Virus record (IMG/VR): IMGVR_UViG_3300034117_001582
Location: 124,001 to 188,000 of that record
Length of the DNA: 64,000 nt
Direction: 5' to 3' (one strand)
In this document: positions 2,014 through 64,000 of the stretch, one piece after another
Layout of the letters: every line of letters begins with the position of its first letter
Numbering within the stretch: the first letter of the stretch is position 1
Program-made: the position numbers and the translations under genes
Notes under the pieces: generated by a model
Told to the model about the DNA's origin: nothing
What the model saw: only the letters and a program-made list of their open reading frames with translations
Database searches by the model: none

Positions 2014-2014
2014 C

Positions 2015-10365: not shown

Positions 10366-10367
10366 AT

Positions 10368-11627: not shown

Positions 11628-11631
11628 AATA

Positions 11632-12893: not shown

Positions 12894-12894
12894 A

Positions 12895-13539: not shown

Positions 13540-13543
13540 AAAA

Positions 13544-15385: not shown

Positions 15386-15386
15386 A

Positions 15387-15827: not shown

Positions 15828-15830
15828 AAT

Positions 15831-17208: not shown

Positions 17209-17492
17209 ATTTTTTAGGTGAAAATTACTATATAGATGTGAATGAATTAGAAGACCAAGTCAGTCTAATTAATTCTAAGTATTATACACCCCCACCTTCA
17301 GGAGAAACTGAAAATGAACAACAAATAAGTGTTACTAGATATGAAACTTTTAAAAGTTTAATTGAAGTCATACTTACCGAAAGAGAAGAATTAGATGAAA
17401 ATTTAGGTATACATGCTGCAAAAAATTTAACTATTCCCTTTAAGATTGCATTTAATACACTATTAATGAATAAAATAATAAAAACACTTTAA
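17202..17492 (+). CDS. hypothetical protein
   Basis: 96-aa coupled ORF. Confidence 0.65.
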   Translation: MLNFLGENYYIDVNELEDQVSLINSKYYTPPPSGETENEQQISVTRYETFKSLIEVILTEREELDENLGIHAAKNLTIPFKIAFNTLLMNKIIKTL

Positions 17493-17493
17493 A

Positions 17494-18561: not shown

Positions 18562-18563
18562 TT

Positions 18564-48596: not shown

Positions 48597-49103
48597 ATGC
48601 AAACATTTCTTCCATACTCAGATTTTAGAAAATCTTTAGAATCTCTTGATAACAAACGATTAGGTAAACAACGCGTTGAGGCTTATCAGATAATTTCAGC
48701 AATTACGGGTCGACCAAAAAAGAACGGACAACCTTATAAAGGGTGGATATCTCACCCATGTTCGGTAATGTGGAAAGACTATGTGAATGCGCTTAAACTA
48801 TACTACAACGATTGTATTGATGTGTGGGTGTCTCGTGGTTTTAAAAACACAATGCAACATGAACACATTGAAGGTGAGTTTGTTTTACCTCATTGGTTGG
48901 GTGATGAAGAGTTTCATTCATCACATAGATCTAATCTATTACGTAAGGATTTTGATTATTATACAAAACACGGGTGGTTAGATAACCCTGACGACCCATA
49001 CGTGTGGATGGATAATCAAGGATTGTGGTACAAACAAATTGCTGGTACTAAAGAAAGGATTTATTATAAACCAAATATTATATTAGAATCCGTTGGTTGT
49101 TGA
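48597..49103 (+). CDS. pyrimidine-dimer DNA glycosylase/EndoV-like (MSMEG_6728 family)
   Basis: MQTFLPY..F..S...LD.KRLGKQRVE..QI, HP...MW, SHRSNLLRKD. Confidence 0.85.
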   Translation: MQTFLPYSDFRKSLESLDNKRLGKQRVEAYQIISAITGRPKKNGQPYKGWISHPCSVMWKDYVNALKLYYNDCIDVWVSRGFKNTMQHEHIEGEFVLPHWLGDEEFHSSHRSNLLRKDFDYYTKHGWLDNPDDPYVWMDNQGLWYKQIAGTKERIYYKPNIILESVGC

Positions 49104-49928
49104 ATTATAGAAAACCAATCCTGTTACGTTAGTTGTTTTTGAGATAGTTGGGGTTGAGTAATTAAATGTCATTACATCACCTCCACCCTGTTCTCCAAAT
49201 TGTATTCTGATTGGATAATAAGTCTCCGCGGTTAATGATGCAGTTCCTGACCGTTCTTGATTTGCGTGTAAACCCCCATTTTTTACTGTCGCATTTAAAG
49301 TAGTAAACCCTGTTATCGCAATATCACCGATCCACATATATGAAGCATCATCCGATGACGTAAAGAATGCGTAGGTTTCCGTTGTTGTTGGTTTGAAATA
49401 ACCTAACCATTGACAACTAAAATTAGATCCATCATCTTGGGCTGGTTCAAATATAGAAGTGGTTTGTACTGATGTTGCCGGATTTCCACCTACCGATGCC
49501 GGAGTTGCAGTTGCAAAGAAACTAACGTTATCGGCAAAATATCCAGAGTAGGTTGTTTTAAATACACCAGCAGTATAAGGTAAAACCCAAGAAGTCCAAT
49601 ACCCATTTGTAGTTAAATACGATGAACACTGAGTAGTTCCGGTAAATGTTTGATTAAATACAGAATTAACTAAATTAATAAATGATTGGTCTGTTTTTAA
49701 TTTTGACCTTGAAAATCTAATATAAGCTGGCACATTGTCAGGGTTAGGTTGATTTCCACTAGTGTTTGGTCTACAAATAACATATCCTAAATCTTCATCG
49801 GGACCATTCCACCATCTAGGGTTTCCAGTAAATCCTGATGATGGCGTACCAACGGCCAATGAACCAATTTGTGTTGTTCCTGATATCGTTGAACCTGTGT
49901 TATATGCGAAAGGTCTTGCAGTTGCCAT
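49083..49928 (-). CDS. PA14-domain virion protein
   Basis: FSCQWLGYF.P....Y.F...SDDAS..WI, NGGLH, YPIRIQFGE.GG. Confidence 0.8.
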   Translation of the reverse strand: MATARPFAYNTGSTISGTTQIGSLAVGTPSSGFTGNPRWWNGPDEDLGYVICRPNTSGNQPNPDNVPAYIRFSRSKLKTDQSFINLVNSVFNQTFTGTTQCSSYLTTNGYWTSWVLPYTAGVFKTTYSGYFADNVSFFATATPASVGGNPATSVQTTSIFEPAQDDGSNFSCQWLGYFKPTTTETYAFFTSSDDASYMWIGDIAITGFTTLNATVKNGGLHANQERSGTASLTAETYYPIRIQFGEQGGGDVMTFNYSTPTISKTTNVTGLVFYNSTTNGF

Positions 49929-49957: not shown

Positions 49958-50884
49958 CTAAACTATTTCCAATACCTTATTATAAACGGCAAAGATTGTT
50001 GGGTGACACTCAAATGTTTCTTTTCTTTCTAAACAATTAACAAGTGAAGGTATACCTTGTATTGATTGCCATTCTCTAACTCCGTATTTAATATCTGAAG
50101 CACAATGTAAACCACAACCACCAAGAACATAATGGTATTTATAACCTTGATTATTTTTTCTATATGGTGCTCTAAATTGAGGGTGTATTGAACTTCCAAG
50201 TTGAATAATTTCTGAGTCTGTTGTTCCTGCTAAATGAAGTAATCCTGAATCCATAGTAATGAAACACATTGCACCATTAATTAACCACCATGTTTGAGAT
50301 AAGGTTGTTTGGTTCATTAAATTCAAACCAATATCAATATTAAAATTAAAAACGGGTTTATCCACATTTGAACCACCAAGTTCTGATGAATCTTTTCCAA
50401 CAGAAATAACGGCAATACCTCTTTCATTTAATAGTTTTGTTAACATTTGCCATTTTTTTGCATCCCAAGTTCTTGAATTCCAATTTTGAACAGGGTGAAT
50501 TAAAACATATTTTTCAGGTAATCCTTCAATTGATTCTACCTCATCAGGAAAATAGTCCATTGACATTTCATCTTTGGTCAACATAAAACCTAAATTAACC
50601 GCATGAAATTGTCTAATATCCATTGCATTATGTTTATAACAAACACCGTTTGGGTGATACCCAATATTAAAGGATTGAAATACTTCATAATCATTTTTAA
50701 TGTCGTCTGTAATTTCATTAAAAATATTATCTACATAAGGATTGTTTTTAAAAATTTCTGGTTGGTTTGTTGCTACTGATATTTTTTTACCGTAAGAATT
50801 ATAAAGTTTTCTTAAAGTGGGTGTTACCGCTAAGGTATCACCTAACGCTCTACATCCTAACACATCAACACAAACATCTTTCAT
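49958..50884 (-). CDS. GT9 (heptosyltransferase-like) glycosyltransferase with C-terminal Cys cluster
   Basis: LGDTL..TP, MDSGLLHLAG, CGLHC...C...FEC. Confidence 0.85.
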   Translation of the reverse strand: MKDVCVDVLGCRALGDTLAVTPTLRKLYNSYGKKISVATNQPEIFKNNPYVDNIFNEITDDIKNDYEVFQSFNIGYHPNGVCYKHNAMDIRQFHAVNLGFMLTKDEMSMDYFPDEVESIEGLPEKYVLIHPVQNWNSRTWDAKKWQMLTKLLNERGIAVISVGKDSSELGGSNVDKPVFNFNIDIGLNLMNQTTLSQTWWLINGAMCFITMDSGLLHLAGTTDSEIIQLGSSIHPQFRAPYRKNNQGYKYHYVLGGCGLHCASDIKYGVREWQSIQGIPSLVNCLERKETFECHPTIFAVYNKVLEIV

Positions 50885-50935
50885 TCTATAATAATATGAA
50901 CTTCACAAATAAACTAAATGTTTTATTTTTATGTT

Positions 50936-53900
50936 ATGGAAAAAACTAAAATAGTCCTCATAAGTTCGTATTGTGATACCGAAGAAAAAATTGACGTTCT
51001 AATAAATACCATCAAAACCATTAAGAGTTACAATTTAGATGTAATGGTAAATAGTCCTTTACCTTTACCTTCAGATGTAATAAATATGTGTGATTTTTAT
51101 GTGCAAACAAAAGAAAACCCATTACTTAATTGGCCCGAAAAATCTGTTATGTCTTGGGCAAGATACATTGGAAAGGATAGGGAAATTGTAGTTAAAAGAT
51201 CGGTAATTGATTATGGGTGGGCAGCACTTTACCAAACTAAAAAATTATCTGAATATGCGTTAACATATGACTATGACAGATATTATCATATTATATATGA
51301 TACGGAAATTGATGATACGGTGGTTTCTACTTTTTTATCGGATAAAAAATGTAACTTTTTTCCATTTCACGAACACAAAGTTAGTTTACATTTAATTGCG
51401 TTAGATAGAGAAAACCTATTGAAATTTTCAAATCTAATAACTTTTGATAGTTACCTTAAATTTAATTGTATTGTTGAGAACTGGCTTTACAACACTCTAA
51501 TTAATAGTGATATGAATTATAAAATTGAATTAGAAAAAATTGATGATTTAATATTATTCCATAAAGACGAAAATTTATTTGACTACTCCGACATTAATGG
51601 TTTAGTTTTTTTCATAGTTAAAGATGTTGTAAATAATGATGAGGTTTGTTTATATTTTTACAATAATAAAGAAAAAATAAATGTTTTAATTACCGTAGAT
51701 GGTGTCGAGTCCTCTTATGATATATCCAATAGGGATATCATTAATTTAGGGTTTAAACCATACAATATAAAAAATGTTTTAATATCTTATGATGGAATAT
51801 CATCGGATATAACAGAAAAAATAAAAAATATTATCCACAATGTTATTGAAATTATTATGAATAAATCAAAAATTAAACTATTATATCTTACACCACACCT
51901 ATCAACAGGTGGAATGCCTCAATTTGTATTAAAAAGAATTCAAGAACTCCAAAAATACAAAGACCAAATTGAAATATTTTTGGTTGAGTATTCTCAGTTT
52001 AGTAACACATACGTTGTCCAACGAGATAAAATAATTAATCTATTAGGTGAAGGTCATTTTTTTAGTTTAGGTGATACAACCGATACAAAAAGAAAATATG
52101 AGCTAATTGATATTATTAAAAACAATAATATTGATATTGTTCATTCAGAAGAAATGTTAGAAGGATTTGAAAGTTTTAATAAAATTCCACTACCATTGTT
52201 AAATCAACTTTATTCAAATGATAGGACTTGGAAAATGGTTGAGACTTGTCATAATGTTTGGTTTAACCCACAAACACATAAAAAGTTCAATCCTGAAGCG
52301 TATTGTTTTGTTACCCCTTATCATTTAAAGGAAACGTTTTTAAATGAAACACCAATTAAGTTTTTATCTCTATACCCAATTGAGAATAAGGTAACTAAAA
52401 TTTTAGAGGAGAATGAAATCTATGGTGATTTTAATCAAGTACCACTTATTGAAAAAATTAAAGTAAGAAATGAACTTGGTTTGGATATGTTTAAAACTCA
52501 CGTACTTAATGTTGGGTTATGGACAAGTGGTAAAAATCAAGGTGAAGGTGTTGAGGTTGCAAGAGAATTAATTGACTCAAACCCAGATATTGAATTCCAT
52601 TTTATTGGGAACCAAGCTCCAAACTTTGAGGACTATTGGGGTCCAATAATGAATAATTTACCATCAAACGTAAAAGTATGGGGTGAGCGTAATGACGTTG
52701 AAAAATTCATGGCGGCTTGTGATGTTTTAATGTTTAACTCAACTTGGGAATGTAATCCGTTGGTTGTTAGAGAATCAATCAACTATGGAATGAAAATACT
52801 TGCAAGAGATTTACCACAATACATGGGTATGTTTGATGGATATATAACACCAATAGAAGGTGATGTTAAAAACATATCAAAACAATTGGTTGGACTTATC
52901 AAAAATAAGGACGTTTATAAAATATTACCTGATGATACATTTGGTGAAGATTTATTAAATTTTTATAACGCAGTTACAAATATAAAAATTACCCAAAACA
53001 AACCATTAACCAAAGATTATACTTTTGTTAGACATTATGTTAATCAACCTTATTTTGAGGTACAAGGAACCACAGAAAACAAATTGAACATTAAATATTA
53101 TGATGATAACAATAATGTTAATTATCAGAACGAATTATCAATTAATAGTTGGGTTAAATTAAATAAAGAATACTTTATTAAATGGAGAACAACGGTTGAA
53201 GAAAATGGTGAAATTATTTACGATGAGACTTTAAATTTAAAAGATAAACGAGTATATATTTCTTTTGGATCAAAATCATTAGGAGATACAATGGCTTGGA
53301 TTCCTTATTGTGAGGTATTTAGAAAAAAACATGGTTGTCAACTTATAGTATCAACATTCCTTAATAGTTTGTTTAAAGACCAATATCCTGAGATTGAATT
53401 TGTTGAACCTGGTGATTTGGTAACTAATATACACGCACAATATAGATTAGGTTGGCATTATACAAGTGAAGGGGTTTACGATAATAACAAACACCCATTT
53501 GATTTTAAGAAAATGCCATTACAAAAAACGGCAACTGACATCTTAGGTTTAGATTATGAAGAAGTTAGACCACTATTAAAATTACCTAACACACCTAAAA
53601 AGAAAAAAGTTGGTATTGGGTTTCACTCAACCGCACAATCAAAATATTGGAACAACCCTGACGGATGGCAAGCAGTTGTTGACCACCTTAATACTTTAGG
53701 TTATGAATGTATGATCTACTCTAAAGAAGGTGACGGATACATGAATAACCATTACCCTAAAGGTGTAACCATTTTTAAAGGAGGTAACTTACAAGAAGTA
53801 ATTGACGACCTATCAGAATGTGAGTTCTTTATTGGTCTCGGATCAGGATTATCTTGGTTAGCTTGGGCTTGTAAATTACCTGTCGTTTTGATTTCAGGAT

Positions 53901-55411
53901 TTAGTGAAAAATGGGCGGAAACAACATTAGACACATATAGAGTTATTAATGAAAGTGTTTGTCACGGATGTTTTAACTCAGATAGATTAGATGCCGGTGA
54001 TTGGAATTGGTGTCCACTACATAAGAACACAGATCGGATGTTTGAATGTACAAAAGAAATAAGTTCCGGTATGGTTATTAAAGAAATAAATAAAATAATT
54101 AACAAAGAATCTAATAGTGATTTAGTTACTATTATATTGTCCCACGCAAACACAAAAGAAAAAAGAAAAATTTTAATAGAACATTTAAAAACAATTAATA
54201 CAAAAATACTACTATCAACAAATTACCCAATTGATGATGAAATTAAAGTTTTATGTGATTACGTCATATATGATGAGGATAACCCAATATTATTGAAGGA
54301 GGATTTTAATAAGTATAACGTGTCTTTTTATTTTTATAGTGTCAGAAAAGGGGTTGAGGTAAGGGAATCCTTTGATTATGAACACGGGTACGCTGTTTAT
54401 AAATTAATACAAAACGGATTAACTGAATCAAAAAAATTAGGATTTAAATATTCTCATATTATAAATTACGATTATTTAATAAACAAAAACACATTACAAG
54501 ATAACTATAAATTATTAGAAAATTACGATTCCGTATTTTATAGATATAAAAATAAATCATATACGCAAGACTCATACTGTACTGGATTTTTTACAGGAAA
54601 AATAGATAAGTTAATTAAACCATTTACCCACTATAACACAAAAGACGAATATTATAATTATGACGGGTATAATAAAATATTAGAAATAATAACAAAAGAT
54701 GCGGTAAAAAAACAAAACTTAAAAGTTAAAGAACTTTTTTATGAAGACTTAAAGGAAACATCAATTGTTAATAGAGTAGACGATAACCACAAAAATAACA
54801 AAGAAGTAATGGAAGAAAACGAATTCAAAAAAATAAGTGATTATTATAATTGCGATAAAACATCCACACACACATACCATAACGTCTATTCAAAAATATT
54901 TGAAGGGATAAGAGATGAGGTATTTTCGTTATTAGAAATCGGAATTCATGAGGGAGCATCTTTAAATGTTTGGAGAGACTATTTGAAGAATGCTAATATA
55001 TATGGTTTAGATATCAATAGGGAATTTTCACATGATAGGGGTCATATTTTTAAAGGAGACCAAAATAACTTATTTGATTTAGAAAAAATCACATCAGAAA
55101 TAAAAAGTTGTAAAGTCATAATTGATGATGCTTCCCATAATCCACAACATCAAATTAAAACCTTTAATTATCTTTTTGAGAATTTATTAGAAGATGGTGG
55201 GTACTATATTATTGAAGACGTTGAAACGTCGTATTGGGATCCATTATCTGAATTATATGGGTATGAAATTGGTTATTTAAATGTTGTTGATTATTTTAGT
55301 AAATTAACACATAATGTTAATTACAAATACAATGGATTTAATAATACTTTAAAAATTGAAAGCATTTTATTTACATCAAATTGTATTGTGATAAAAAAAT
55401 TAATGAAATAA
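50936..55411 (+). CDS. multidomain glycosyltransferase: GT-A-like, GT4, TibC/Aah-type O-heptosyltransferase, GT-A-like, methyltransferase
   Basis: PHLSTGGMPQ / ECNPLVVRES (GT4); SLGDTMAW.PY, GLGSGLSWLAWA, ISGFS, YRVIN..CHGC..C..FEC (TibC); LLEIGI, IIDDASH, GGYYIIEDV (MTase). Confidence 0.85.
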   Translation: MEKTKIVLISSYCDTEEKIDVLINTIKTIKSYNLDVMVNSPLPLPSDVINMCDFYVQTKENPLLNWPEKSVMSWARYIGKDREIVVKRSVIDYGWAALYQTKKLSEYALTYDYDRYYHIIYDTEIDDTVVSTFLSDKKCNFFPFHEHKVSLHLIALDRENLLKFSNLITFDSYLKFNCIVENWLYNTLINSDMNYKIELEKIDDLILFHKDENLFDYSDINGLVFFIVKDVVNNDEVCLYFYNNKEKINVLITVDGVESSYDISNRDIINLGFKPYNIKNVLISYDGISSDITEKIKNIIHNVIEIIMNKSKIKLLYLTPHLSTGGMPQFVLKRIQELQKYKDQIEIFLVEYSQFSNTYVVQRDKIINLLGEGHFFSLGDTTDTKRKYELIDIIKNNNIDIVHSEEMLEGFESFNKIPLPLLNQLYSNDRTWKMVETCHNVWFNPQTHKKFNPEAYCFVTPYHLKETFLNETPIKFLSLYPIENKVTKILEENEIYGDFNQVPLIEKIKVRNELGLDMFKTHVLNVGLWTSGKNQGEGVEVARELIDSNPDIEFHFIGNQAPNFEDYWGPIMNNLPSNVKVWGERNDVEKFMAACDVLMFNSTWECNPLVVRESINYGMKILARDLPQYMGMFDGYITPIEGDVKNISKQLVGLIKNKDVYKILPDDTFGEDLLNFYNAVTNIKITQNKPLTKDYTFVRHYVNQPYFEVQGTTENKLNIKYYDDNNNVNYQNELSINSWVKLNKEYFIKWRTTVEENGEIIYDETLNLKDKRVYISFGSKSLGDTMAWIPYCEVFRKKHGCQLIVSTFLNSLFKDQYPEIEFVEPGDLVTNIHAQYRLGWHYTSEGVYDNNKHPFDFKKMPLQKTATDILGLDYEEVRPLLKLPNTPKKKKVGIGFHSTAQSKYWNNPDGWQAVVDHLNTLGYECMIYSKEGDGYMNNHYPKGVTIFKGGNLQEVIDDLSECEFFIGLGSGLSWLAWACKLPVVLISGFSEKWAETTLDTYRVINESVCHGCFNSDRLDAGDWNWCPLHKNTDRMFECTKEISSGMVIKEINKIINKESNSDLVTIILSHANTKEKRKILIEHLKTINTKILLSTNYPIDDEIKVLCDYVIYDEDNPILLKEDFNKYNVSFYFYSVRKGVEVRESFDYEHGYAVYKLIQNGLTESKKLGFKYSHIINYDYLINKNTLQDNYKLLENYDSVFYRYKNKSYTQDSYCTGFFTGKIDKLIKPFTHYNTKDEYYNYDGYNKILEIITKDAVKKQNLKVKELFYEDLKETSIVNRVDDNHKNNKEVMEENEFKKISDYYNCDKTSTHTYHNVYSKIFEGIRDEVFSLLEIGIHEGASLNVWRDYLKNANIYGLDINREFSHDRGHIFKGDQNNLFDLEKITSEIKSCKVIIDDASHNPQHQIKTFNYLFENLLEDGGYYIIEDVETSYWDPLSELYGYEIGYLNVVDYFSKLTHNVNYKYNGFNNTLKIESILFTSNCIVIKKLMK

Positions 55412-55502: not shown

Positions 55503-56018
55503 TTATCCATTAGCGGCCTTTATCCACTCACAAGTTAAAAAATCGGAAGTACTAACAACAGAACCTGCCACAATTAAATATTGATTAACCGTCCAATTTA
55601 TTGATAAAGTAGAAAATCCTGTTGTATAGTTAGCAACACCAATATCATCTCTCGCACCAATAGTTGAATTAATCGCTATTGTTGCATTTCCTGTTCCTGC
55701 GGCAACATTTATTGCCAATCTTCTATATAACTGAGCCGCTCTTGTGGCAGTAGCAACTGATGTATTTGTGGCAACTAAAGTCGCACCAACAAGTGTTGCG
55801 GATGTGTTAACATAAAAATAAAAACTAAATGCGTTGTTAGCCGCACTTTTTGTAACGCAAGTTTCTATTGTAACAATATCATCAGCAACAAATGTGTTCG
55901 CCGGTATTAAAATAGAATGAATTAAAGTTATAGATGTGGAGTTTACACTTCCTGTTTGTGTGGTAGATGTAACTACCGCGTATTTTTTTCCCACATTAAA
56001 TCCGTCTATTTTAGCCAT
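55503..56018 (-). CDS. fibre-associated beta protein, paralog 3
   Basis: MAKIDGFN, IPANTF, INWTV..Y.I.AG. Confidence 0.65.
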   Translation of the reverse strand: MAKIDGFNVGKKYAVVTSTTQTGSVNSTSITLIHSILIPANTFVADDIVTIETCVTKSAANNAFSFYFYVNTSATLVGATLVATNTSVATATRAAQLYRRLAINVAAGTGNATIAINSTIGARDDIGVANYTTGFSTLSINWTVNQYLIVAGSVVSTSDFLTCEWIKAANG

Positions 56019-56529
56019 TTGTAATTCTTATCCATTGACAGTTTATGTTATCGGCTGCGTTGTCAACATCACCCGCCAATATAATATAACTATCTACAGT
56101 CCAATTTATTGCTAAAGAACTTGGGATTGTGGTTAAAGCAGCATTATATATATAATCTTGATTAACATCTACAGTATTCAACAATACATTAGTCCCATTT
56201 CCTGACCCATCTGACACCATAATACTAAGCCTTCTTACAAAAAGTATTGCAGTTATGGTTGCAGTAACTCCTATGTTTTCGGCAATTTGAACCGGAGTTG
56301 TTAAATCGTCAGTATTGTTCCAATATAATCTTACATTTGAAACCGCATTAGTTCCTGTTTTTTTTACAAAAGATTCAAGTTTAACGACATCAAAAGTTTT
56401 AAATGTATTTGCTGGAACAAAAATAGAACCTAACTTAACTTCCGTTAACGAGGATGTAGTTGATTGAGGTGTTGTCAAACTTATTGTCTGAAACGGACTA
56501 TACATGTTGAACCCATTAATTTTTGCCAT
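56011..56529 (-). CDS. fibre-associated beta protein, paralog 2
   Basis: MAKINGFN, VPANTF, YWN.TDDLTTP, INWTVDSYIILAG. Confidence 0.65.
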   Translation of the reverse strand: MAKINGFNMYSPFQTISLTTPQSTTSSLTEVKLGSIFVPANTFKTFDVVKLESFVKKTGTNAVSNVRLYWNNTDDLTTPVQIAENIGVTATITAILFVRRLSIMVSDGSGNGTNVLLNTVDVNQDYIYNAALTTIPSSLAINWTVDSYIILAGDVDNAADNINCQWIRITNG

Positions 56530-56792
56530 TACAAGTCGTATACATAATTTATAAAGTCTTGAGAAACCAAAAATGAAATATTGTCAATAGTTACATCTCT
56601 AACTTTGAAAAAAATAATGTTTCCGTCAAGTTCAATTGAAACGTCTTCATCATTATTTGTAAAATATCCTTTTTGACCATTTTCATCTTCAATTAAAAAT
56701 GTTAAAGTTCTTGGGATATCTAAAAAAGAAGACCCCTCTTCTGAATCAATTTTTTTAACCAACGTGTTTCTTTTTTTTTCTAACTGTATCAT
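56529..56792 (-). CDS. hypothetical protein, possibly fibre chaperone
   Basis: 87 aa between paralogs. Confidence 0.55.
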   Translation of the reverse strand: MIQLEKKRNTLVKKIDSEEGSSFLDIPRTLTFLIEDENGQKGYFTNNDEDVSIELDGNIIFFKVRDVTIDNISFLVSQDFINYVYDL

Positions 56793-56796
56793 ATCT

Positions 56797-57303
56797 TTAA
56801 TTACTTACTTTTAAAAATTCTGTTCTAACACCTGTCCCTGTTCCACAAAATCCGGCCAATATAATGTATGAATCCACTGTCCAATTTAGTGCGACGGTAG
56901 ATAAAGCAAAACTTGCAGCCGTAAAATCAGAATCATGCGCGGTTCCTGTTCCATAAATTTTAGAACCATTTCCTGTCCCATTTGCAACAATTACTGACAA
57001 CCTTCTATTTTGACCATAAAATATACTTGTGTTCAAAAGACTTCTTACGGTTAATTGTATTGGTGTTGTTAAATCGTCAGTTTCATTCCAATATAAAGTT
57101 GTTGAATAATTTCCTGACGTTAAACCTGTTAATTTGGTTTGCCATTCTATATGTAAAATATCACCAGCAGCAAAAGTATTTGCAGGAACATAAACAGATG
57201 TAATTTTAGTTGTTGACGCCGCATTAACATAATTACTTGGTGTGCCATTAGTTGAAACAACTTGTTTATTATTATAAAAATCAAATCCGTTAAATTTACT
57301 CAT
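56797..57303 (-). CDS. fibre-associated beta protein, paralog 1
   Basis: MSKFNGFD, VPANTF, YWNETDDLTTP, LNWTVDSYIILAG. Confidence 0.65.
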   Translation of the reverse strand: MSKFNGFDFYNNKQVVSTNGTPSNYVNAASTTKITSVYVPANTFAAGDILHIEWQTKLTGLTSGNYSTTLYWNETDDLTTPIQLTVRSLLNTSIFYGQNRRLSVIVANGTGNGSKIYGTGTAHDSDFTAASFALSTVALNWTVDSYIILAGFCGTGTGVRTEFLKVSN

Positions 57304-57307: not shown

Positions 57308-60300
57308 TTAAATTTCTACCCAACTATTATCAGGATTAAAATAAATTGTTTCATTAGTCCCATCCAAACTATAACCAATTATTCTTATTATATCACCACT
57401 TCCTGAAGGTGCCGTTGTTGTTATACCTCCTGCGGTTGTTGAAACATATAAAATATCACCTGTGGTTGTTGTGAATCCTGAATTTCTAATATATCCGTTT
57501 ATTAACATACCACTCGTCGTTCCCGTACCTAACGCAAATGCTAACATTCCTGTGGAGCCTGATGCAAAATCCGCATCTGCCGCAACCCAAGCCCCTGAAC
57601 TATTATAGTAATATAGATTACCCGCAGTTAATGACCCCGTACCAAAAGTCACAATATCACCATAACCTGAAACTGAAGATGTTAATCCTGTTACGGGGTT
57701 ATGTATGAATTGGTAATCACCTCTAACATCTATTTTTCTTGATGGAGATGCGGTACCAATACCAACATTTGTTCCATCATCAAAAATAGTACTTGTGCTT
57801 GATAATGTTGATGTTGTTTGCCATTTAACGGCATAATTGGCTGTTCCTGATCCTACAAAAGAAGTTCCAGAAGTACCGTTAGTTCCGCTTGTACCATTTG
57901 TACCGTTGGTTCCTGATGTTCCATTCGTACCATTTGTACCTGACGTGCCATTTGTTCCTGAAGTTCCATTGGTTCCCGATGTTCCGTTTAATCCATTGTA
58001 AACCCACGATATTGTATAGGTCTGAGCCGAAAAAGAACCATTTCCAACAACATTGGTTAAATCAAATTGGTATACAGATCCCGAAACTGAAATACCGTTT
58101 ACAGCCCAAATACCAATAATATTATTACTACCAACTTTAGTCACTTGTAAATAAACAGTATTTCCTGATGATTGTATTGAATCAATTGCCGAAAACCAAG
58201 CCGAGTAATTAACACTGTTAATGTCGGTGGTATTAATGTAAATAATGGTTGTTGCTGATATTGTTGCGGAATCACTATTAAACTTTGTTTCGATAGGGCC
58301 ACCACCTAGTTTCCAGAAATCCCATCTACCTGAGTTTGACCCGTCATTACCATAAATCCCACTAGTTCCGTTAGTTCCATTCGTACCACTTGTTCCTCTT
58401 GTGCCTGAAGTGCCGTTGGTCCCTGAAGACCCATTAGTTCCTGATGTACCATTAGTTCCTGAAGTACCATTAGTTCCTGATGTACCATTAGTTCCTGAAG
58501 TACCATTAGTACCATTTAGTCCATTAAAGACCCACGAAACAGTATACGTAGCCTGATCGGTTAAAGCCCCTGAACCAGTGACAAAACTAAGCCCTATATC
58601 CCAATATGTGGTATTATCCGTCATACCTGTTATATCATAGATTCCAATTACACTATTATTACCTAATTCTGTTATTTGTAGATAACCTTTATTACCCGCC
58701 GATTTTAAAACGGCACAGGCATCAAACCAATCGTAATAATCTATTGTATTAATATCTACAACATTAATAGAAATATATGAAATTGTTGATATTATTTGTG
58801 TGTCAGGAACAAAGTATGTCGAAACAGGACTTCCAGGTACAGTTCCTTCATTATACCATCTTCCACTATTTGAACCATCATTACCCACTTTTCCAGTATT
58901 TCCATTATTTCCTGAAGTTCCATCAGTTCCTGAAGTTCCATCAGTTCCTGAAGTTCCTGCCTGTGCCATTAATGCCCAATTACCACTAAATGGAGGAGTT
59001 GGTATCCCCGTATTACCATTTATTAATGAAATATAAGAACTACCGGCAAATTGAACGACATCATTTATATTGTAAGTGGACATTAAGTTCCATGAACCTT
59101 GCCAATTAAATGAAATGCCACTAGTTCCGTTAGTACCTGATGTTCCGTTAGTACCTGATGTTCCATTTGTTCCATTAGTACCGTTAGTTCCTGAAGTACC
59201 ATTAGTCCCCGAAGTTCCATTTGTACCATTAGTACCATTAGTACCTGAGGTTCCATTTGTACCATTAGTACCTGAAGTTCCATTCGTTCCGCTTGTACCA
59301 TTAGTTCCATTCGTTCCGCTTGTACCATTAGTTCCATTCGTTCCAGATGTTCCTGAAGTTCCATTTGTCCCACTTGATCCATTAGTTCCATTCGTACCTG
59401 AAGTTCCATTTGTACCCGAAGTTCCATTTGTACCATTTGTTCCCGAAGTCCCGTTTGTTCCTGATGTTCCGTTTGTACCATTCGTTCCTGAAGTACCTGA
59501 TGTTCCATTGGTCCCTGAAGTTCCGTTTGTACCAGAAGTCCCATTTGTACCGTTCATTCCTGAAGTCCCATTAGTACCATTGGTTCCTGAAGTACCATTT
59601 GTTCCGCTAGTGCCATTTGTCCCTGAGGTACCATTCGTTCCACTAGTTCCGTTTGTCCCGTTCGTTCCACTTGTTCCGTTAGTTCCAGATGTCCCATTTG
59701 TTCCGTTAGTTCCACTAGTGCCGTTGGTACCATTTGTACCATTAGTTCCTGAAGTCCCATTAGTACCGCTAGTTCCATTTGTACCATTTGTTCCTGATGT
59801 TCCATTTGTGCCGTTAGTTCCGCTCGTACCATTTGTCCCACTTGTACCGTTGGTACCATTCGTTCCTGAAGTTCCATTTGTTCCGCTAGTCCCGTTTGTT
59901 CCCGATGTTCCATTTGTACCGTTAGTTCCTGAAGTACCATTTGTTCCGCTCGTACCATTAGTCCCTGAAGTACCGTTGGTTCCATTTGTGCCGTTTGTCC
60001 CTGAAGTCCCGTTAGTACCGTTCGTTCCCGAAGTTCCATTTGTTCCATTAGTTCCTGATGTGCCGTTTGTTCCTGAAGTTCCATTAGTCCCTGATGTTCC
60101 ATTAGTACCGTTAGTTCCGTTAGTACCAGATGTTCCATTCGTTCCTGAGGTTCCATTTGTTCCATTAGTACCATTCGTTCCTGAAGTTCCATTAGTACCA
60201 TTCGTACCGCTAGTGCCATTTGTGCCGCTAGTTCCATTAGTCCCCGACGTACCATTTGTTCCATTGGTACCTGATGTTCCATTGGTACCGCTAGTTCCAT

Positions 60301-63300
60301 TCGTGCCGTTTGTTCCCGACGTTCCATTAGTACCGTTCGTCCCTGAAGTTCCGTTTGTACCATTCGTTCCTGAAGTTCCGTTGGTACCTGAAGTTCCATT
60401 CGTACCGTTGGTACCACTTGAACCATTTGTTCCCGAAGTTCCATTAGTCCCGTTAGTCCCATTAGTACCTGAAGTTCCGTTTGTACCTGAAGTTCCGTTT
60501 GTACCATTAGTACCCGATGTTCCATTTGTTCCTGAAGTTCCATTTGTACCTGAAGTCCCGTTAGTACCTGAGGTTCCATTGGTGCCTGATGTTCCGTTAG
60601 TACCTGAAGTCCCATTTGTTCCATTTGTACCTGAGGTGCCGTTTGTTCCTGAAGTCCCGTTTGTTCCGTTAGTTCCACTTGTACCATTCGTACCTGAAGT
60701 CCCATTAGTTCCTGAAGTTCCGTTTGTACCATTAGTACCTGATGTACCATTAGTTCCTGAAGTTCCGTTTGTACCACTAGTACCTGATGTACCATTAGTT
60801 CCAGATGTTCCGTTCGTACCATTTGTACCTGATGTTCCGTTAGTACCTGACGTACCATTAGTACCTGAAGTTCCGTTTGTACCTGATGTACCATCAGTCC
60901 CATCAACACCAGAAAGTCCACTAGATCCATTCGTACCATTCGTTCCAGATGTGCCATTTGTACCCGAAGTTCCATTTGTACCATTTGTTCCCGAAGTCCC
61001 GTTTGTTCCTGAAGTTCCGTTGGTACCATTAGTCCCGTTTGTTCCCGATGTACCATTTGTGCCGCTAGTACCGTTTGTTCCATTTGTGCCGCTAGTACCA
61101 TTCGTACCGTTGGTTCCATTTGTCCCTGATGTACCATTTGCTCCACTTGTACCATTTGTACCTGAAGTTCCATTTGTTCCATTTGTGCCTGACGTTCCGT
61201 TTGTACCGTTTGTCCCCGAAGTTCCATTTGCTCCGCTAGTTCCATTAGTCCCGTTGGTACCACTTGAACCATTTGTACCTGAAGTTCCATTTGTTCCGTT
61301 AGTCCCTGATGTGCCATTTGTTCCCGAAGTTCCATTAGTACCGTTGGTTCCATTCGTCCCATTTGTTCCTGATGTTCCATTTGTTCCGTTTGTACCTGAA
61401 GTACCATTTGTACCTGAAGTTCCATTTGTACCTGAAGTTCCGGCAGATGTTAATAAATTTGTACCGACACCCGCAGCACATGCGGTTATGTCAAGAAACG
61501 CACCTCTTGCAGTACCACCTTGTTCAAAAAACCTAATTCTATCTTGCCATATGTCAAAAGTGACCCCTGTACCTGAAATGGTAGTGTTAGTTACAGGTTT
61601 GTTTAATAGGATTTCCCCACCTTCATCACCAGCCTGATACAATACACTTAATTTTGTACCATCAAATGTTAAAAGAGATTCGGCAACTATTCCTCCTGAT
61701 CCGTTTGACGTTAAAACTTGATTATCTGAACCTGGTACTGCAGGTGATGATCCACTTGTTCCGTTTGTTCCGCTCGTACCATTAGTGCCTGAAGTTCCAT
61801 TTGTTCCGTTTGTACCTGAAGTTCCATTAGTTCCTGACGATCCATTTGTACCATTTGTTCCTGAAGTTCCGTTGGTCCCGCTCGTACCATTTGTACCATT
61901 TGTACCTGAAGTTCCATTAGTTCCGTTAGTTCCGCTAGTACCATTAGTACCGCTAGTACCATTCGTACCTGATGTTCCGTTTGTCCCATTTGTTCCCGAA
62001 GTTCCATTTGTACCTGAAGTCCCGTTCGTACCATTTGTTCCTGATGTTCCATTAGTCCCTGATGTTCCGTTTGTTCCATTAGTCCCTGAAGTTCCATTCG
62101 TTCCATTAGTTCCGCTAGTCCCATTTGTACCTGAAGTCCCGTTGGTTCCATTAGTACCATTCGTCCCTGAAGTGCCATTTGTGCCGCTAGATCCATTAGT
62201 CCCAGAAGTTCCGCTAGTACCGTTAGTGCCTGAAGTACCATCTGTACCTGATGTTCCCGCAATAAATGGTGATAATGAAGTGGTTACCTGAGCAATTGTT
62301 GCATCTTCAAAATAACAAGTCATTGTTTTTGCACCTAATGAGGTTGCATAGAACTTAACGACTATTCTATCACTAATATTTACCGTTGTTGCGGGTACAG
62401 GTACAGAAAATAAATAAAGCTCCACAAGCGTACCGTCGCTAATGGGGTGGGGTGCCGCACTATTTGATCCAATTAAAGTTTCAGTACCACCTGTTGTTCT
62501 AATATATATATCAGCATATAATTTTGGAGTACCACCATTGGAGCTCATACTAACGTAATTCTCAAAGTTCCAGTTTCCTGCGGGTATTGTGGTTATTCCT
62601 GGATCACCAATAATTGTTGAAAATGAACCTATTAGTTGTGTTCCAGCACCTGTTGCCGTTAATGTTGTTCCGGCACCTATCACTATGTTTCTATCCATTA
62701 CATAGTAAGTTGGAATTGTAGATGCGGATGAAGGGTTAAAATAATAAACTAAACCTGTTGAAAATCCATTCACCCCTGAAGTTCCATTAGTACCGCTGGT
62801 TCCGTTCGTTCCATTTGTACCTGATGTTCCATTGGTCCCTGATGTTCCATTCGTCCCGTTTGTTCCCGATGTACCATTCGTTCCGTTAGTACCTGAGGTT
62901 CCATTCGTTCCGCTAGTTCCATTTGTTCCTGAAGTCCCATTTGTACCATTTGTTCCGTTTGTTCCACTAGTCCCATCTGTTCCGTTAGTCCCCGATGTTC
63001 CGTTGGTTCCATTAGTCCCGCTAGTACCATTGGTACCTGATGTTCCTGAAGTTCCATTTGTACCTGACGTTCCATTTGCACCATTTGTTCCCGAAGTCCC
63101 ATTTGTACCATTAGTCCCATTTGTACCATTAGTTCCTGATGTTCCATTAGTCCCCGATGTGCCATTTGTTCCATTAGTTCCTGATGTACCATTAGTACCG
63201 TTAGTTCCTGAAGTCCCGTTAGTTCCTGAAGTCCCGTTTGTGCCATTTGTTCCTGACGTTCCGTTAGTTCCACTTGTACCATTGGTACCTGATGTTCCGT

Positions 63301-64000
63301 TAGTTCCATTAGTACCATTAGTACCATTAGTTCCTGAAGTACCATTTGTACCTGATGTACCATTCGTACCATTTGTTCCACTAGTACCATTTGTTCCCGA
63401 AGTTCCATTAGTTCCATTCGTACCTGAAGTACCTGATGTTCCATTGGTCCCTGAAGTTCCGTTTGTACCAGAAGTCCCTGAAGTACCATTTGTACCGTTA
63501 GTTCCACTTGTACCATTTGTTCCGTTAGTGCCCGATGTTCCATTAGTACCTGAAGTACCGTTTGTTCCGTTAGTTCCTGAGGTACCATTCGTTCCCGAAG
63601 TTCCATTTGTACCATTGGTTCCGCTAGTTCCGTTTGTTCCATTAGTACCTGAAGTTCCATTAGTTCCTGACGTACCATTTGTACCGTTTGTTCCCGAAGT
63701 ACCGTTTGTTCCCGAAGTACCATTTGTTCCTGATGTTCCATTAACCCCCGATATGCCACTTGTACCATTTGTTCCTGATGTTCCATTTGTACCATTTGTT
63801 CCGCTAGTACCATTCGTACCTGAAGTTCCGTTCGTTCCATTTGTACCTGAAGTGCCGTTTGTTCCATTAGTTCCTGATGTCCCATTTGTACCATTCGTTC
63901 CATTTGCTCCGCTAGTACCATTTGTACCCGAAGTTCCATCAGTACCATTAGTTCCGTTAGCACCTGAAGTACCATTTGTTCCGCTAGTACCATCCGTTCC
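57308..64000 (-). CDS. giant collagen-like (Gly-Thr-Asn/Gly-Thr-Ser) fibre protein, 5'-truncated (>2200 aa)
   Basis: the frame of the 1821-aa ORF stays open upstream of the GTG at 62773 (...GTSGVNGF) with GTN/GTS repeats to the window edge; interspersed globular domains; NVGIGT.SP fibre motif. Confidence 0.85.
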   Translation of the reverse strand, partial: GTDGTSGTNGTSGANGTNGTDGTSGTNGTSGANGTNGTNGTSGTNGTNGTSGTNGTNGTSGTNGTSGTNGTNGTSGTNGTSGISGVNGTSGTNGTSGTNGTSGTNGTNGTSGTNGTSGTNGTNGTSGTNGTNGTSGTNGTSGTNGTNGTSGTNGTSGTNGTNGTSGTNGTNGTSGTSGTNGTSGTNGTSGTSGTNGTNGTSGTNGTSGTNGTNGTSGTNGTSGTNGTNGTNGTNGTSGTNGTSGTNGTSGTNGTNGTSGTNGTSGTNGTNGTSGTNGTNGTSGTNGTSGTNGTNGTNGTNGTSGTNGANGTSGTNGTSGTSGTNGTSGTNGTNGTSGTNGTDGTSGTNGTNGTNGTSGTNGTSGTNGTSGTNGTNGTSGTNGTNGTSGTNGTSGTNGTNGTSGTNGTSGVNGFSTGLVYYFNPSSASTIPTYYVMDRNIVIGAGTTLTATGAGTQLIGSFSTIIGDPGITTIPAGNWNFENYVSMSSNGGTPKLYADIYIRTTGGTETLIGSNSAAPHPISDGTLVELYLFSVPVPATTVNISDRIVVKFYATSLGAKTMTCYFEDATIAQVTTSLSPFIAGTSGTDGTSGTNGTSGTSGTNGSSGTNGTSGTNGTNGTNGTSGTNGTSGTNGTNGTSGTNGTNGTSGTNGTSGTNGTNGTSGTNGTSGTNGTNGTSGTNGTSGTNGTSGTNGTNGTSGTNGTNGTSGTNGTSGTNGTNGSSGTNGTSGTNGTNGTSGTNGTSGTNGTSGSSPAVPGSDNQVLTSNGSGGIVAESLLTFDGTKLSVLYQAGDEGGEILLNKPVTNTTISGTGVTFDIWQDRIRFFEQGGTARGAFLDITACAAGVGTNLLTSAGTSGTNGTSGTNGTSGTNGTNGTSGTNGTNGTNGTNGTSGTNGTSGTNGTNGTSGTNGSSGTNGTNGTSGANGTSGTNGTNGTSGTNGTNGTSGTNGTSGANGTSGTNGTNGTNGTSGTNGTNGTSGTNGTSGTNGTNGTNGTSGTNGTSGTNGTNGTSGTNGTSGTNGTNGSSGLSGVDGTDGTSGTNGTSGTNGTSGTNGTSGTNGTNGTSGTNGTSGTSGTNGTSGTNGTSGTNGTNGTSGTNGTSGTNGTSGTNGTNGTSGTNGTSGTNGTNGTSGTNGTSGTNGTSGTNGTSGTNGTSGTNGTSGTNGTNGTSGTNGTSGTNGTNGTNGTSGTNGSSGTNGTNGTSGTNGTSGTNGTNGTSGTNGTNGTSGTNGTNGTSGTNGTSGTNGTNGTSGTNGTSGTNGTSGTNGTNGTSGTNGTNGTNGTSGTNGTSGTNGTNGTNGTSGTNGTSGTNGTSGTNGTNGTSGTNGTNGTSGTNGTNGTNGTSGTNGTSGTNGTSGTNGTNGTSGTNGTSGTNGTSGTNGTNGTSGTNGTSGTNGTNGTSGTNGTNGTSGTNGTSGTNGTNGTNGTSGTNGTNGTSGTNGTSGTNGTNGTSGTNGTSGTNGTSGTNGTSGTNGTNGTSGMNGTNGTSGTNGTSGTNGTSGTSGTNGTNGTSGTNGTSGTNGTNGTSGTNGTSGTNGTNGSSGTNGTSGTSGTNGTNGTSGTNGTNGTSGTNGTSGTNGTNGTSGTNGTNGTNGTSGTNGTSGTNGTNGTNGTSGTNGTSGTNGTSGISFNWQGSWNLMSTYNINDVVQFAGSSYISLINGNTGIPTPPFSGNWALMAQAGTSGTDGTSGTDGTSGNNGNTGKVGNDGSNSGRWYNEGTVPGSPVSTYFVPDTQIISTISYISINVVDINTIDYYDWFDACAVLKSAGNKGYLQITELGNNSVIGIYDITGMTDNTTYWDIGLSFVTGSGALTDQATYTVSWVFNGLNGTNGTSGTNGTSGTNGTSGTNGTSGTNGSSGTNGTSGTRGTSGTNGTNGTSGIYGNDGSNSGRWDFWKLGGGPIETKFNSDSATISATTIIYINTTDINSVNYSAWFSAIDSIQSSGNTVYLQVTKVGSNNIIGIWAVNGISVSGSVYQFDLTNVVGNGSFSAQTYTISWVYNGLNGTSGTNGTSGTNGTSGTNGTNGTSGTNGTNGTSGTNGTSGTSFVGSGTANYAVKWQTTSTLSSTSTIFDDGTNVGIGTASPSRKIDVRGDYQFIHNPVTGLTSSVSGYGDIVTFGTGSLTAGNLYYYNSSGAWVAADADFASGSTGMLAFALGTGTTSGMLINGYIRNSGFTTTTGDILYVSTTAGGITTTAPSGSGDIIRIIGYSLDGTNETIYFNPDNSWVEI
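59120..61440 (-). repeat. main block of 9-bp degenerate GTN/GTS repeats (others at ~57870-57990, 58360-58520, 61755-62258, 62775-64000)
   Basis: period-9 pattern of GTWCC-containing units with synonymous variation. Confidence 0.95.

What the first reader, a model, noticed from the sequence alone, without database searches (positions are those of the whole stretch)
50936..55411. Five-domain glyco-enzyme that looks recently fused from separate genes
Seen: the N-terminal domain (LISSYCD..K..L...DFY....NPLL...YG.A...HIIYD) is repeated after the TibC domain (IILSHAN..K..L...DYV....NPILL...HG.A...HIINYD). In-frame gene-like starts occur at 51857 (MNKSKIKLLYL) and before the methyltransferase (MEENEF). 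Inference: an assembly line that primes, extends and methyl-caps a glycan, with an uncharacterised GT-A-like domain.
Basis: partly seen in the sequence, partly recalled or inferred. Interest (0 to 1): 0.6.

Follow-up and report, generated by a model that had tools for sequence, protein, structure and literature searches.

The report
Phage multi-domain glycosylation enzyme, newly fused
A lake jumbo phage carries one 1,497-residue gene that strings together four sugar-transferring domains and a sugar methylase; it was made partly by a single extra A that joined two neighbouring genes, and it most likely coats the phage's giant collagen-like fibre with methylated sugars.

Summary
ORF 50918/50936-55411 (+) is open and has six folded units:
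- X1: a GT-A domain plus a beta-sandwich.
- A GT4-type GT-B domain.
- A TibC/Aah-type protein O-heptosyltransferase (TIGR04414, 287 bits against a cut-off of 200).
- X2: a second GT-A domain, homologous to X1 (BLASTP 4e-9).
- A MycE/TylE-like sugar O-methyltransferase.

AlphaFold models of X1 and X2 (pLDDT about 93) match GT-A enzymes at Z 13-14. No Pfam model covers this domain, yet it occurs in more than 1,200 protein clusters, almost all viral.

"Recently fused" is literally true for X1. In over 200 relatives X1 is a separate gene of about 310 aa. A 99.6%-identical contig has the usual ATGA stop/start overlap, and the window differs by one extra A (51849-51851). The fused form is real DNA: it is in two other IMG/VR genomes and in contigs from three sequencing runs.

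The rest of the gene is modular. Relatives swap, permute or split GT2, GT4, X, TibC and two methyltransferase types. "MEENEF" is not shown to be an old start.

The likely substrate is inferred. A collagen-like Gly-Thr-Asn/Ser fibre gene lies within 10 kb of 55/80 TibC loci and of 0/80 control loci.

Verdict: a new variant of a known kind, of moderate interest.

The parts
50936..55411 (+). Fused ORF, 1491 aa from ATG 50936 (an upstream in-frame ATG at 50918 gives 1497 aa). Residue numbers below count from 50918.
50936..51562 (+). X1 GT-A-fold domain (residues 7-215) from an uncurated, phage-specific family. The Asp (CD), Asn (NP), Tyr-Asp and Glu positions are invariant or nearly so in every family alignment made.
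   Evidence: AF2 pLDDT 92.8. VIA-align Z 13-14, rmsd about 3 A, 160-175 residues aligned to mannosylglycerate synthase, glycogenin and alpha-3GalT. Foldseek hits include PBCV-1 A64R and BoGT6a. Conserved positions.
51590..51856 (+). Beta-sandwich C-terminal extension of X1 (residues about 225-313), of unknown role. It accompanies the stand-alone X1 genes in relatives.
51849..51851 (+). AAA run holding the one extra A that removes the X1 stop and puts X1 in frame with the next gene. The near-identical relative L006 has AA here, giving a TGA stop that overlaps the ATG.
   Evidence: The fused form is confirmed in Logan contigs of runs X1, X2 and X4 and in two IMG/VR genomes.
51857..53017 (+). GT4-type GT-B glycosyltransferase domain (residues 314-700). 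It begins at the ancestral start codon of gene 2 (ATG 51857). The E-x7-E motif is present.
   Evidence: PF00534/PF13692 above cut-off. Weak WaaG (2iv7) match, E 0.007. Start codon.
53018..54103 (+). TibC/Aah-type protein O-heptosyltransferase domain (residues 701-1062), with catalytic Asp790, Thr905, Lys909, Trp980 and iron-finger Cys1015/1018/1032/1044. The adenine-contacting Arg of TibC is Val961 here.
   Evidence: TIGR04414 1.8e-85, 287 bits against cut-off 200. PDB 4rap 1.6e-71. Residue roles from PMC4358343. Conservation in 7 phage homologues.
54104..54802 (+). X2, a second GT-A-fold domain (residues 1063-1295), paralogous to X1 but without the beta-sandwich.
   Evidence: AF2 pLDDT 92.9, pTM 0.90. 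VIA-align Z about 14. Atlas structural matches to phage GT1/GT9/MT multidomain clusters.
54803..55411 (+). MycE/TylE-like SAM- and metal-dependent sugar O-methyltransferase domain (residues 1296-1497, plus the stop). The DDxSH and IED motifs are retained.
   Evidence: PDB 3ssm 3e-14 and 8ia9 5e-10. phrog_21658 5e-18.
57308..64000 (-). Giant collagen-like fibre gene, more than 2230 aa and running off the window. It has about 474 Gly-Thr-Asn/Ser/Asp/Ala triplets interrupted by globular domains. Proposed acceptor of the glycan.
   Evidence: Association statistics.
49958..50884 (-). Divergently transcribed GT9 (heptosyltransferase-like) gene of 308 aa, a conserved neighbour of the locus. Probably part of the same glycosylation unit.
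   Evidence: PF01075 2e-15. Weak TIGR04414 match. Present beside the TibC gene in about 35 of 80 related loci.

Best explanation
The ORF is a modular protein-glycosylation enzyme of a roughly 292-kb tailed jumbo phage from lake water.

Shown:
- It contains a TibC/Aah-type protein O-glycosyltransferase domain with the catalytic Asp, the phosphate- and sugar-binding residues and the iron finger all intact.
- It contains a GT4-type GT-B domain.
- It contains two paralogous GT-A-fold domains of an uncurated family that occurs almost only in viruses.
- It contains a MycE/TylE-like sugar O-methyltransferase with its metal and catalytic motifs.
- The first GT-A unit (X1) is ancestrally a separate gene. 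It is joined here to the four-module gene by one extra A in a homopolymer.
- Both the split and the fused alleles circulate, and the locus is a recombination mosaic whose modules are swapped, permuted and split among relatives.

Inferred:
- The TibC-like domain puts the first sugar on Ser/Thr of the neighbouring giant collagen-like (Gly-Thr-Asn/Ser)n fibre. That sugar may be a heptose, though the nucleotide specificity may differ from TibC.
- The GT4 domain and the two GT-A domains extend the glycan.
- The methyltransferase O-methylates a sugar hydroxyl.
- The result is a heavily glycosylated virion fibre.
For: Domain identities.

TibC functional residues are conserved in all seven phage homologues examined (mapped).

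GT-A fold of both X copies.

X family size and partners: 1251 clusters at E<=1e-3. Among 50 multidomain members the partners are GT1 (22), GT9 (18) and methyltransferases.

Fusion by one base.

The fused allele is real. Contigs of three runs span the junction with 0 differences and no indel is reported in any of the four runs laid. Two further IMG/VR genomes carry it.

Module shuffling.

Mosaic identity of 79.6-100% across adjacent segments.

Substrate inference:
- A collagen-like ORF lies within 10 kb in 55/80 TibC loci (45/52 of loci >=15 kb) against 0/80 capsid-gene control loci of the same phage group.
- The association holds in 10 of 12 TibC clusters at 70% identity and beside the Microcystis phage Mel-JY01 homologue.
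- The locus sits near the structural genes.
Against: - No activity, donor sugar or acceptor was tested.
- The Arg that reads adenine in TibC is Val/Ile/Leu in every phage homologue.
- No GmhA-type heptose pathway gene was found in the phage, so the donor may not be ADP-heptose.
- Known TibC/Aah acceptors are beta-helical autotransporter passengers, not collagen-like helices.
- Conserved synteny among related phages is not proof of an enzyme-substrate relationship.
- The X domains tie in Z-score with sugar nucleotidyltransferases (IspD, GlmU).
- The internal ATG at 51857 may still be used, so the fusion could have little functional consequence.
Confidence: 0.6

Rival explanations
1. The single long ORF is a sequencing or assembly artefact. 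A homopolymer miscount (AA read as AAA) falsely joins two genes that are separate in the real phage.
For: The difference from the split allele in L006 is one base in an A run. Every other relative keeps X1 as its own gene.
Against: Logan contigs assembled independently from three runs, one of them not a candidate source sample, span the junction with no differences or gaps. No indel is reported in any of the four runs laid. Two other IMG/VR genomes, whose X1 differs by 5.3% in DNA, carry the identical fused junction.
Confidence: 0.05
2. The enzyme does not decorate a virion protein. It builds or alters a non-protein glycan instead, for example by modifying host LPS or capsule (receptor masking, superinfection exclusion) or by glycosylating phage DNA.
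For: GT9 enzymes are mostly LPS heptosyltransferases. The GT4 domain's only PDB sequence hit is WaaG. A language-model lead points to the WavE LPS family. The phage carries a large separate set of sugar genes at 1-26 kb.
Against: The domain passes the TibC/Aah equivalog model well above its cut-off, while LPS heptosyltransferase I scores only 18 bits. It keeps the BAHT-specific iron finger and aligns from TibC residue 40, inside TibC's N-terminal barrel of residues 1-97. There is strong, lineage-spanning adjacency to collagen-like fibre genes. The WavE lead was not confirmed by any HMM hit.
Confidence: 0.2
3. The two X domains are sugar nucleotidyltransferases that make activated donors for the GT-B domains, not glycosyltransferases.
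For: The structural matches to IspD, GlmU, KdsB and CofC-type nucleotidyltransferases are as strong (Z 13-14) as those to GT-A glycosyltransferases.
Against: The loop after strand 1 lacks the Gly-rich G-x-G-x-R signature of nucleotidyltransferases and looks like the GT2-type strand-loop-helix (sequence; signature from general knowledge). The conserved Asp, Tyr-Asp and Glu pattern matches the nucleotide-binding, DXD-position and catalytic-base layout of inverting GT-A enzymes (inference). The top Foldseek hits are all glycosyltransferases.
Confidence: 0.12

Closest known systems
TibC / Aah bacterial autotransporter heptosyltransferases (BAHT family, TIGR04414; PDB 4rap; Yao et al. 2014, PMC4358343)
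   Same: Sequence match of 1.6e-71 over TibC residues 40-386. The catalytic Asp110, Thr226, Lys230, Trp305 and all four iron-finger cysteines are conserved.
   Different: The domain is embedded in a 1,497-aa multidomain phage protein. The adenine-reading Arg286 is Val, and the stereoselectivity residue Pro300 is Gly. No autotransporter was noticed among the window ORFs annotated, and the rest of the genome was not searched for one. The likely acceptor is a collagen-like fibre. The oligomeric state is unknown.
Mycobacteriophage virion glycosylation cassettes (glycosyltransferase plus methyltransferase genes next to structural genes; Freeman et al. 2023, as cited in PMC12619734)
   Same: Phage-encoded GT and methyltransferase genes beside structural genes. 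The methyltransferase domain here is homologous to those phages' methyltransferase genes (tblastn 1e-10 to 7e-11).
   Different: Those are separate small genes acting on capsid and tail-tube C-termini. Here five enzyme domains are fused, a TibC-type primer domain is present, and the presumed target is a collagen-like fibre.
Glycosylated collagen-like surface fibres: Bacillus BclA (O-glycans with methylated sugars on Thr of GxT repeats) and Mimivirus fibrils (own knowledge; giant-virus glycans reviewed in PMC9614988)
   Same: A Thr-rich collagen-like repeat protein on a particle surface, encoded alongside dedicated GTs and a sugar methyltransferase.
   Different: There is no sequence relationship between the enzymes. 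This is a functional analogy only.
MycE / TylE macrolide sugar 2-O-methyltransferases (PDB 3ssm, 8ia9)
   Same: The catalytic core aligns at 3e-14. The Asp/Glu/Asp metal ligands and the catalytic His are retained (residue roles from memory).
   Different: Only the roughly 200-aa catalytic core is present. MycE's N-terminal auxiliary domain is absent, and the substrate is presumably a protein-linked glycan rather than a macrolide.
Microcystis phage Mel-JY01 protein WWT39291.1 (annotated 'methyltransferase FkbM')
   Same: It has GT4, X, MycE-like MT and TibC domains at 38-49% identity, and a collagen-like ORF close by.
   Different: The domain order is GT4-X-MT-TibC, with a single X copy and no X1 type unit.

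Membership tests
BAHT (TibC/Aah) protein O-heptosyltransferases, TIGR04414 | Scores above the curated equivalog cut-off | tested here: met
   287.1 bits against a cut-off of 200. 291 bits in the genome search.
BAHT (TibC/Aah) protein O-heptosyltransferases, TIGR04414 | Catalytic base Asp110 and beta-phosphate/heptose ligands Thr226, Lys230, Trp305 | tested here: met
   Asp790, Thr905, Lys909 and Trp980 are conserved in the window and in six other phage homologues.
BAHT (TibC/Aah) protein O-heptosyltransferases, TIGR04414 | 1Fe-0S iron finger (Cys339, 342, 358, 370) | tested here: met
   Cys1015, 1018, 1032 and 1044 are all present. Metal binding itself was not tested.
BAHT (TibC/Aah) protein O-heptosyltransferases, TIGR04414 | Arg286 contact to adenine N1, which specifies an ADP-activated donor | tested here: not met
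   This position is Val961 here and Val/Ile/Leu in all phage homologues. The role of Arg286 is from PMC4358343.
BAHT (TibC/Aah) protein O-heptosyltransferases, TIGR04414 | Acceptor is the beta-helical passenger of a self-associating autotransporter | not tested
   No autotransporter search of the phage genome was run. The conserved neighbour is a collagen-like fibre.
BAHT (TibC/Aah) protein O-heptosyltransferases, TIGR04414 | Ring-shaped dodecamer | not testable with these tools
   The thumb-tip residues Phe265/Val266 are Tyr/Met here. No assembly prediction was run.
GT4-type GT-B glycosyltransferases (Pfam Glycos_transf_1) | Pfam match above the gathering score, and the E-x7-E motif | tested here: met
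   PF00534 at 30.5-32.7 bits (cut-off 26.4) and PF13692 at 32.5-33.9 bits (cut-off 27). An E-x7-E motif is visible in the translation.
GT-A fold glycosyltransferases | Nucleotide-diphospho-sugar transferase fold | tested here: met
   X1 reaches Z 14.0 against 2bo7 (rmsd 3.0, 162 aligned). X2 reaches Z 14.4 against 2y4m and 9yq5. Both models have pLDDT about 93.
GT-A fold glycosyltransferases | DXD metal-binding motif after strand 4 | tested here: inconclusive
   Only one Asp (in Tyr-Asp) is invariant at that position. The second acidic residue is present in X1 types but absent in most X2 types. Metal-independent GT-A enzymes do exist.
GT-A fold glycosyltransferases | Membership of a curated sequence family (Pfam, or the WavE/GT25 leads) | tested here: not met
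   There was no relevant Pfam hit for X1, X2 or 31 family members, even at E<=1. The WavE and GT25 leads come only from language-model similarity.
MycE/TylE SAM- and metal-dependent sugar O-methyltransferases | Catalytic-core homology with metal ligands (Asp, Glu-Asp) and catalytic His | tested here: met
   3ssm 3.1e-14 and 8ia9 5.1e-10. The DDxSH and IED motifs align. Residue roles are recalled from the MycE literature and were not re-read here.
MycE/TylE SAM- and metal-dependent sugar O-methyltransferases | N-terminal auxiliary/oligomerisation domain of MycE | tested here: not met
   The alignment covers only chain residues 197-331 of MycE. The domain here is about 200 aa.

The most novel reading that the evidence does not exclude
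Many aquatic tailed phages may encode their own protein O-glycosylation system. In this reading it is built from a TibC-type priming domain, an unrecognised phage-specific GT-A family and interchangeable GT and methyltransferase modules. Its dedicated substrate would be the Thr-rich collagen-like fibres of the virion. That would be a phage counterpart of the autonomous glycosylation machinery of giant viruses, evolving by rapid module fusion, fission and exchange, with this window catching a one-base fusion in progress.
Probability: 0.4. Interest if true: 0.75.

Novelty: new variant of a known kind. Interest (0 to 1): 0.58.

Why it matters
Virion glycosylation is well documented in giant viruses, and recently in mycobacteriophages, but is barely explored in environmental phages.

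- **Testable system.** The locus pairs a candidate enzyme with a candidate substrate (the collagen-like fibre). IMG/VR holds 496 stretches that encode TibC relatives.
- **Unannotated family.** It exposes a GT-A domain family of more than 1,200 clusters, almost all viral, that no curated model annotates.
- **Evolution in progress.** Split and fused alleles differ by one base and coexist in lake populations. The surrounding locus is a recombination mosaic in which glycosyltransferase and methyltransferase modules are exchanged.
- **Possible new donor chemistry.** The TibC clade here has lost the adenine-reading arginine, which may mark a new donor specificity for protein O-glycosyltransferases.

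Tried and rejected
- **Megablast against GenBank phages.** No match for the gene.
- **Word-based search with X2 alone.** Only 3 hits, because of the length filter. The exhaustive profile search was needed.
- **WavE and GT25 leads from the protein atlas.** hmmscan of 31 family members at E<=1 did not confirm them. They are kept only as leads.
- **Heptose pathway in the phage.** No GmhA/SIS_2 gene was found. A cytidylyltransferase-like ORF at 15387-15827 matches RfaE domain II below its cut-off, so ADP-heptose synthesis by the phage is not supported.
- **Exact-junction scans to estimate allele frequencies.** Viral contigs returned only the two fused genomes. Two metagenome-contig scans returned nothing. 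Allele frequencies remain unknown.
- **Literature searches for phage TibC or glycosylated collagen-like phage fibres.** Nothing relevant was found.
- **'MEENEF' as a relic start codon.** Rejected as unsupported: that methyltransferase type was never a separate gene in the related loci.
- **Assembly artefact.** Rejected.
- **Not attempted.** No complex prediction of enzyme with fibre was run. Collagen-like repeats and transient enzyme-substrate contacts are poor cases for that test, and a negative result would be uninformative. The beta-sandwich of X1 was not folded or searched alone.


Full report
**Context.** The window is bases 124001-188000 of a 291,867-bp IMG/VR virus record judged 99% complete. 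GC content is about 30%. It is a tailed phage: the window holds a major head protein (27022-28830), a portal (33328-35139) and a large terminase (35180-36958). Sequencing runs that hold the locus are all lake-water metagenomes.

**Observation.** One ORF runs 50918-55411 on the + strand and encodes 1497 aa. The ATG at 50936 is the start used by relatives and by the stored gene call.

Domain searches give the following:
- A GT-B/GT4 domain at about residues 314-700. PF00534 and PF13692 both score above their cut-offs.
- A TibC/Aah O-heptosyltransferase domain at residues 722-1061. TIGR04414 gives 1.8e-85 and 287 bits against a cut-off of 200. PDB 4rap gives 1.6e-71.
- A C-terminal methyltransferase. 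Its best solved relatives are the macrolide sugar O-methyltransferases MycE (3e-14) and TylE (5e-10), and the DDxSH and IED motifs align.
- Residues 1-313 and 1063-1295 match no Pfam family.

The two unmatched stretches match each other: BLASTP gives E 4e-9 and 27% identity over 120 aa. The alignment extends through a shared Tyr-Asp motif and a conserved Glu.

**What the repeated domain is.** AlphaFold2 models were built from alignments of natural homologues and are confident.
- X1 has pLDDT 92.8. Its residues 1-210 superpose on GT-A enzymes: Z 14.0, rmsd 3.0 A and 162 residues against mannosylglycerate synthase, and Z about 13 against glycogenin, alpha-1,3-galactosyltransferase and GtrB. Foldseek's top hits are also all GT-A enzymes, including the chlorovirus capsid-glycosylating A64R.
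- X1 has an additional beta-sandwich at about residues 220-307.
- X2 has pLDDT 92.9 and pTM 0.90. It gives the same fold at Z about 14.
- Sugar nucleotidyltransferases (IspD, GlmU) tie in Z-score.

I favour a transferase for four reasons. The loop after strand 1 lacks the glycine-rich nucleotidyltransferase signature. The conserved Asp, Tyr-Asp and Glu pattern fits an inverting GT-A layout. Foldseek's top hits are glycosyltransferases. The domain's fusion partners are glycan-building modules. This is an inference, and the rival is kept at about 0.12.

A profile of the domain finds 1,251 clusters (at 50% identity) with E<=1e-3 and 651 with E<=1e-10. Structural neighbours in the ESM Atlas are 97-100% viral. 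In 50 multidomain members the partners are GT1 (22), GT9/TibC-like (18), and FkbM-type (11) and other methyltransferases. No member hits a relevant Pfam family even at E<=1. The genome holds only these two copies.

**Is it recently fused?** For X1 the answer is yes, by one base.
- Over 200 relatives encode X1 as a stand-alone protein of 307-321 aa that ends just after the '...HNVIE...' motif.
- Contig L006 is 99.6% identical in X1 DNA with a single gap. Its X1 ends in a TGA that overlaps the ATG of the next gene, MNKSKIKLL.
- The window has GAAATTATTATGA where L006 has GAATTATTATGA.

This is not an assembly error. Logan contigs of three runs span the junction with zero differences and zero gaps, and one of those runs is not a candidate source sample. 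No indel is reported in any of the four runs laid. Two other IMG/VR genomes have the identical fused junction, even though their X1 differs by 5.3% in DNA and their upstream gene by 20%.

Identity along the locus jumps between 79.6% and 100% in adjacent segments. The locus is therefore a recombination mosaic. The fused junction has either spread by recombination or arisen more than once.

**Modularity of the rest.** Other phages carry other arrangements:
- Relatives at about 89% protein identity in X1 carry X1 | GT2-GT4-TibC-FkbM-type MT. The GT4-TibC core is 94-95% identical, but there is no X2 and the methyltransferase is of a different type.
- Another relative lacks X1 altogether.
- Phages at 35-50% identity have GT4-X-MT (765 aa) and TibC (382 aa) as two genes.
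- Microcystis phage Mel-JY01 has GT4-X-MT-TibC in one ORF.

IMG/VR holds 496 stretches that encode TibC relatives. Among the best 80 of these I found 24 different layouts. The window's layout occurs only in the two genomes already mentioned. The MycE-like methyltransferase was never a separate gene in these loci, so 'MEENEF' is not supported as a relic start.

**TibC domain details.** Residue roles come from Yao et al. 2014 (PMC4358343) and were mapped with the HMMER alignment.
- Conserved in all seven phage homologues: Asp110 (Asp790 here), Thr226, Lys230, Trp305 and the four iron-finger cysteines.
- Changed in all of them: Arg286, which contacts adenine N1 and explains ADP specificity, is Val/Ile/Leu. 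Pro300, the heptose stereoselectivity residue, is Gly.
- The phage has no GmhA-like gene.

The chemistry (O-glycosylation of protein Ser/Thr) is well supported by homology. The donor is open.

**Likely substrate.** Downstream on the opposite strand lies a gene of more than 2230 aa. It is made of about 474 Gly-Thr-(Asn/Ser/Asp/Ala) triplets interrupted by globular domains, and it matches phage tail-fibre and collagen-like families.
- A collagen-like ORF (at least 30 consecutive-type GXY triplets) lies within 10 kb of the TibC gene in 55 of 80 loci, and in 45 of 52 loci of at least 15 kb.
- The same measure is 0 of 80 (0 of 18) for control loci centred on the capsid gene of the same phage group.
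- The association holds in 10 of 12 TibC clusters at 70% identity, and beside the Mel-JY01 gene.

I infer that the fibre's Thr/Ser array is the acceptor. This is analogous to BclA-type collagen-like glycoproteins (own knowledge). Synteny is not proof, and I put this step at about 0.55.

**Mechanism proposed.** The TibC-like domain primes Ser/Thr. GT4 extends the glycan; a weak WaaG-like signal hints at a hexose added onto heptose. X1 and X2 add further sugars, and the MycE-like domain O-methylates one of them. A divergent GT9-like gene (49958-50884) and a PA14/GLEYA protein (49083-49928) are conserved neighbours and may take part.

**Comparison and novelty.** Each catalytic fold is known. Databases already auto-label some phage proteins 'Aah/TibC'. 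I found no paper on phage TibC-type enzymes or on glycosylated collagen-like phage fibres. The nearest studied systems are the mycobacteriophage virion glycosylation cassettes, whose methyltransferases are homologous to this one (Freeman 2023 as cited in PMC12619734), and giant-virus glycosylation (PMC9614988).

The finding is a new variant of a known kind. It combines a rare five-enzyme architecture, an uncurated family of GT-A domains found almost only in viruses, a one-base gene fusion seen as a natural polymorphism, and a strong genomic link to collagen-like fibres.

Noticed in passing
window 2693-19373 (+ strand): A dense run of glycan genes. It includes a weak, sub-threshold GT1-like match (2693-3937), GT2 variants (5270-6733, 8073-8795, 9616-10365, 18564-19373) and methyltransferases (7504-8076, sub-threshold; FkbM-type 12874-13539). 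It also has a GT10 fucosyltransferase (11632-12486), a DegT-type aminotransferase fragment (13544-14158), GDP-mannose 4,6-dehydratase (14405-15385) and a cytidylyltransferase-like ORF (15387-15827). dUTPase, an exonuclease and PhoH are interspersed. The phage appears to carry an unusually large sugar-handling repertoire of its own.
   Followed up: partly
window 57308-64000 (-): A giant collagen-like fibre gene that runs off the window, made almost entirely of Gly-Thr-Asn/Ser triplets. Every Asn-Gly-Thr is also a formal N-x-T sequon. Repeated globular inserts and a C-terminal domain interrupt the repeats. Relatives reach about 3,100 aa.
   Followed up: partly
window 49958-50884 (-): A divergent 308-aa GT9-like gene that weakly matches the TibC model. 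It keeps the catalytic Asp and three of the four iron-finger cysteines. It is only about 80% identical in DNA to the copy in L007, although the neighbouring gene is 94-100% identical.
   Followed up: partly
window 49083-49928 (-); L003 5971-6942: A PA14/GLEYA carbohydrate-binding domain protein sits near the locus. The related phage has a Laminin_G_3 protein in a similar position. It may be a lectin-like fibre or adhesin component.
   Followed up: no
window 55503-57303 (-): Four small ORFs (171, 172, 87 and 168 aa) with no family match lie between the enzyme gene and the fibre gene. They are absent from L007/L008, where the fibre gene follows directly.
   Followed up: no
window 48597-49103 (+): A pyrimidine-dimer DNA glycosylase (DenV-like, PF03013, 4.8e-20). 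This is a UV-repair gene, plausible for a surface-water phage.
   Followed up: no
window 41090-43135 (+), 43185-44219 (+): A Lon-like ATP-dependent protease (phrog_4871, 3.5e-223) followed by a peptidase gene, close to the head genes.
   Followed up: no
L001 (Microcystis phage Mel-JY01, PP395634.1) 1-3052 and 4750-8430: The four-domain GT4-X-MT-TibC protein is annotated only as 'methyltransferase FkbM'. A 1,016-codon collagen-like open frame on the + strand (2-3049) is annotated instead as minus-strand hypothetical proteins, which is probably a mis-annotation.
   Followed up: partly
IMG/VR loci L102-L181: The capsid gene of this phage has at least 600 relatives at 75-100% identity in IMG/VR, so the phage belongs to a very abundant freshwater group. 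Whether that group is the 'moraphage' lineage of PMC12619734 was not tested.
   Followed up: no
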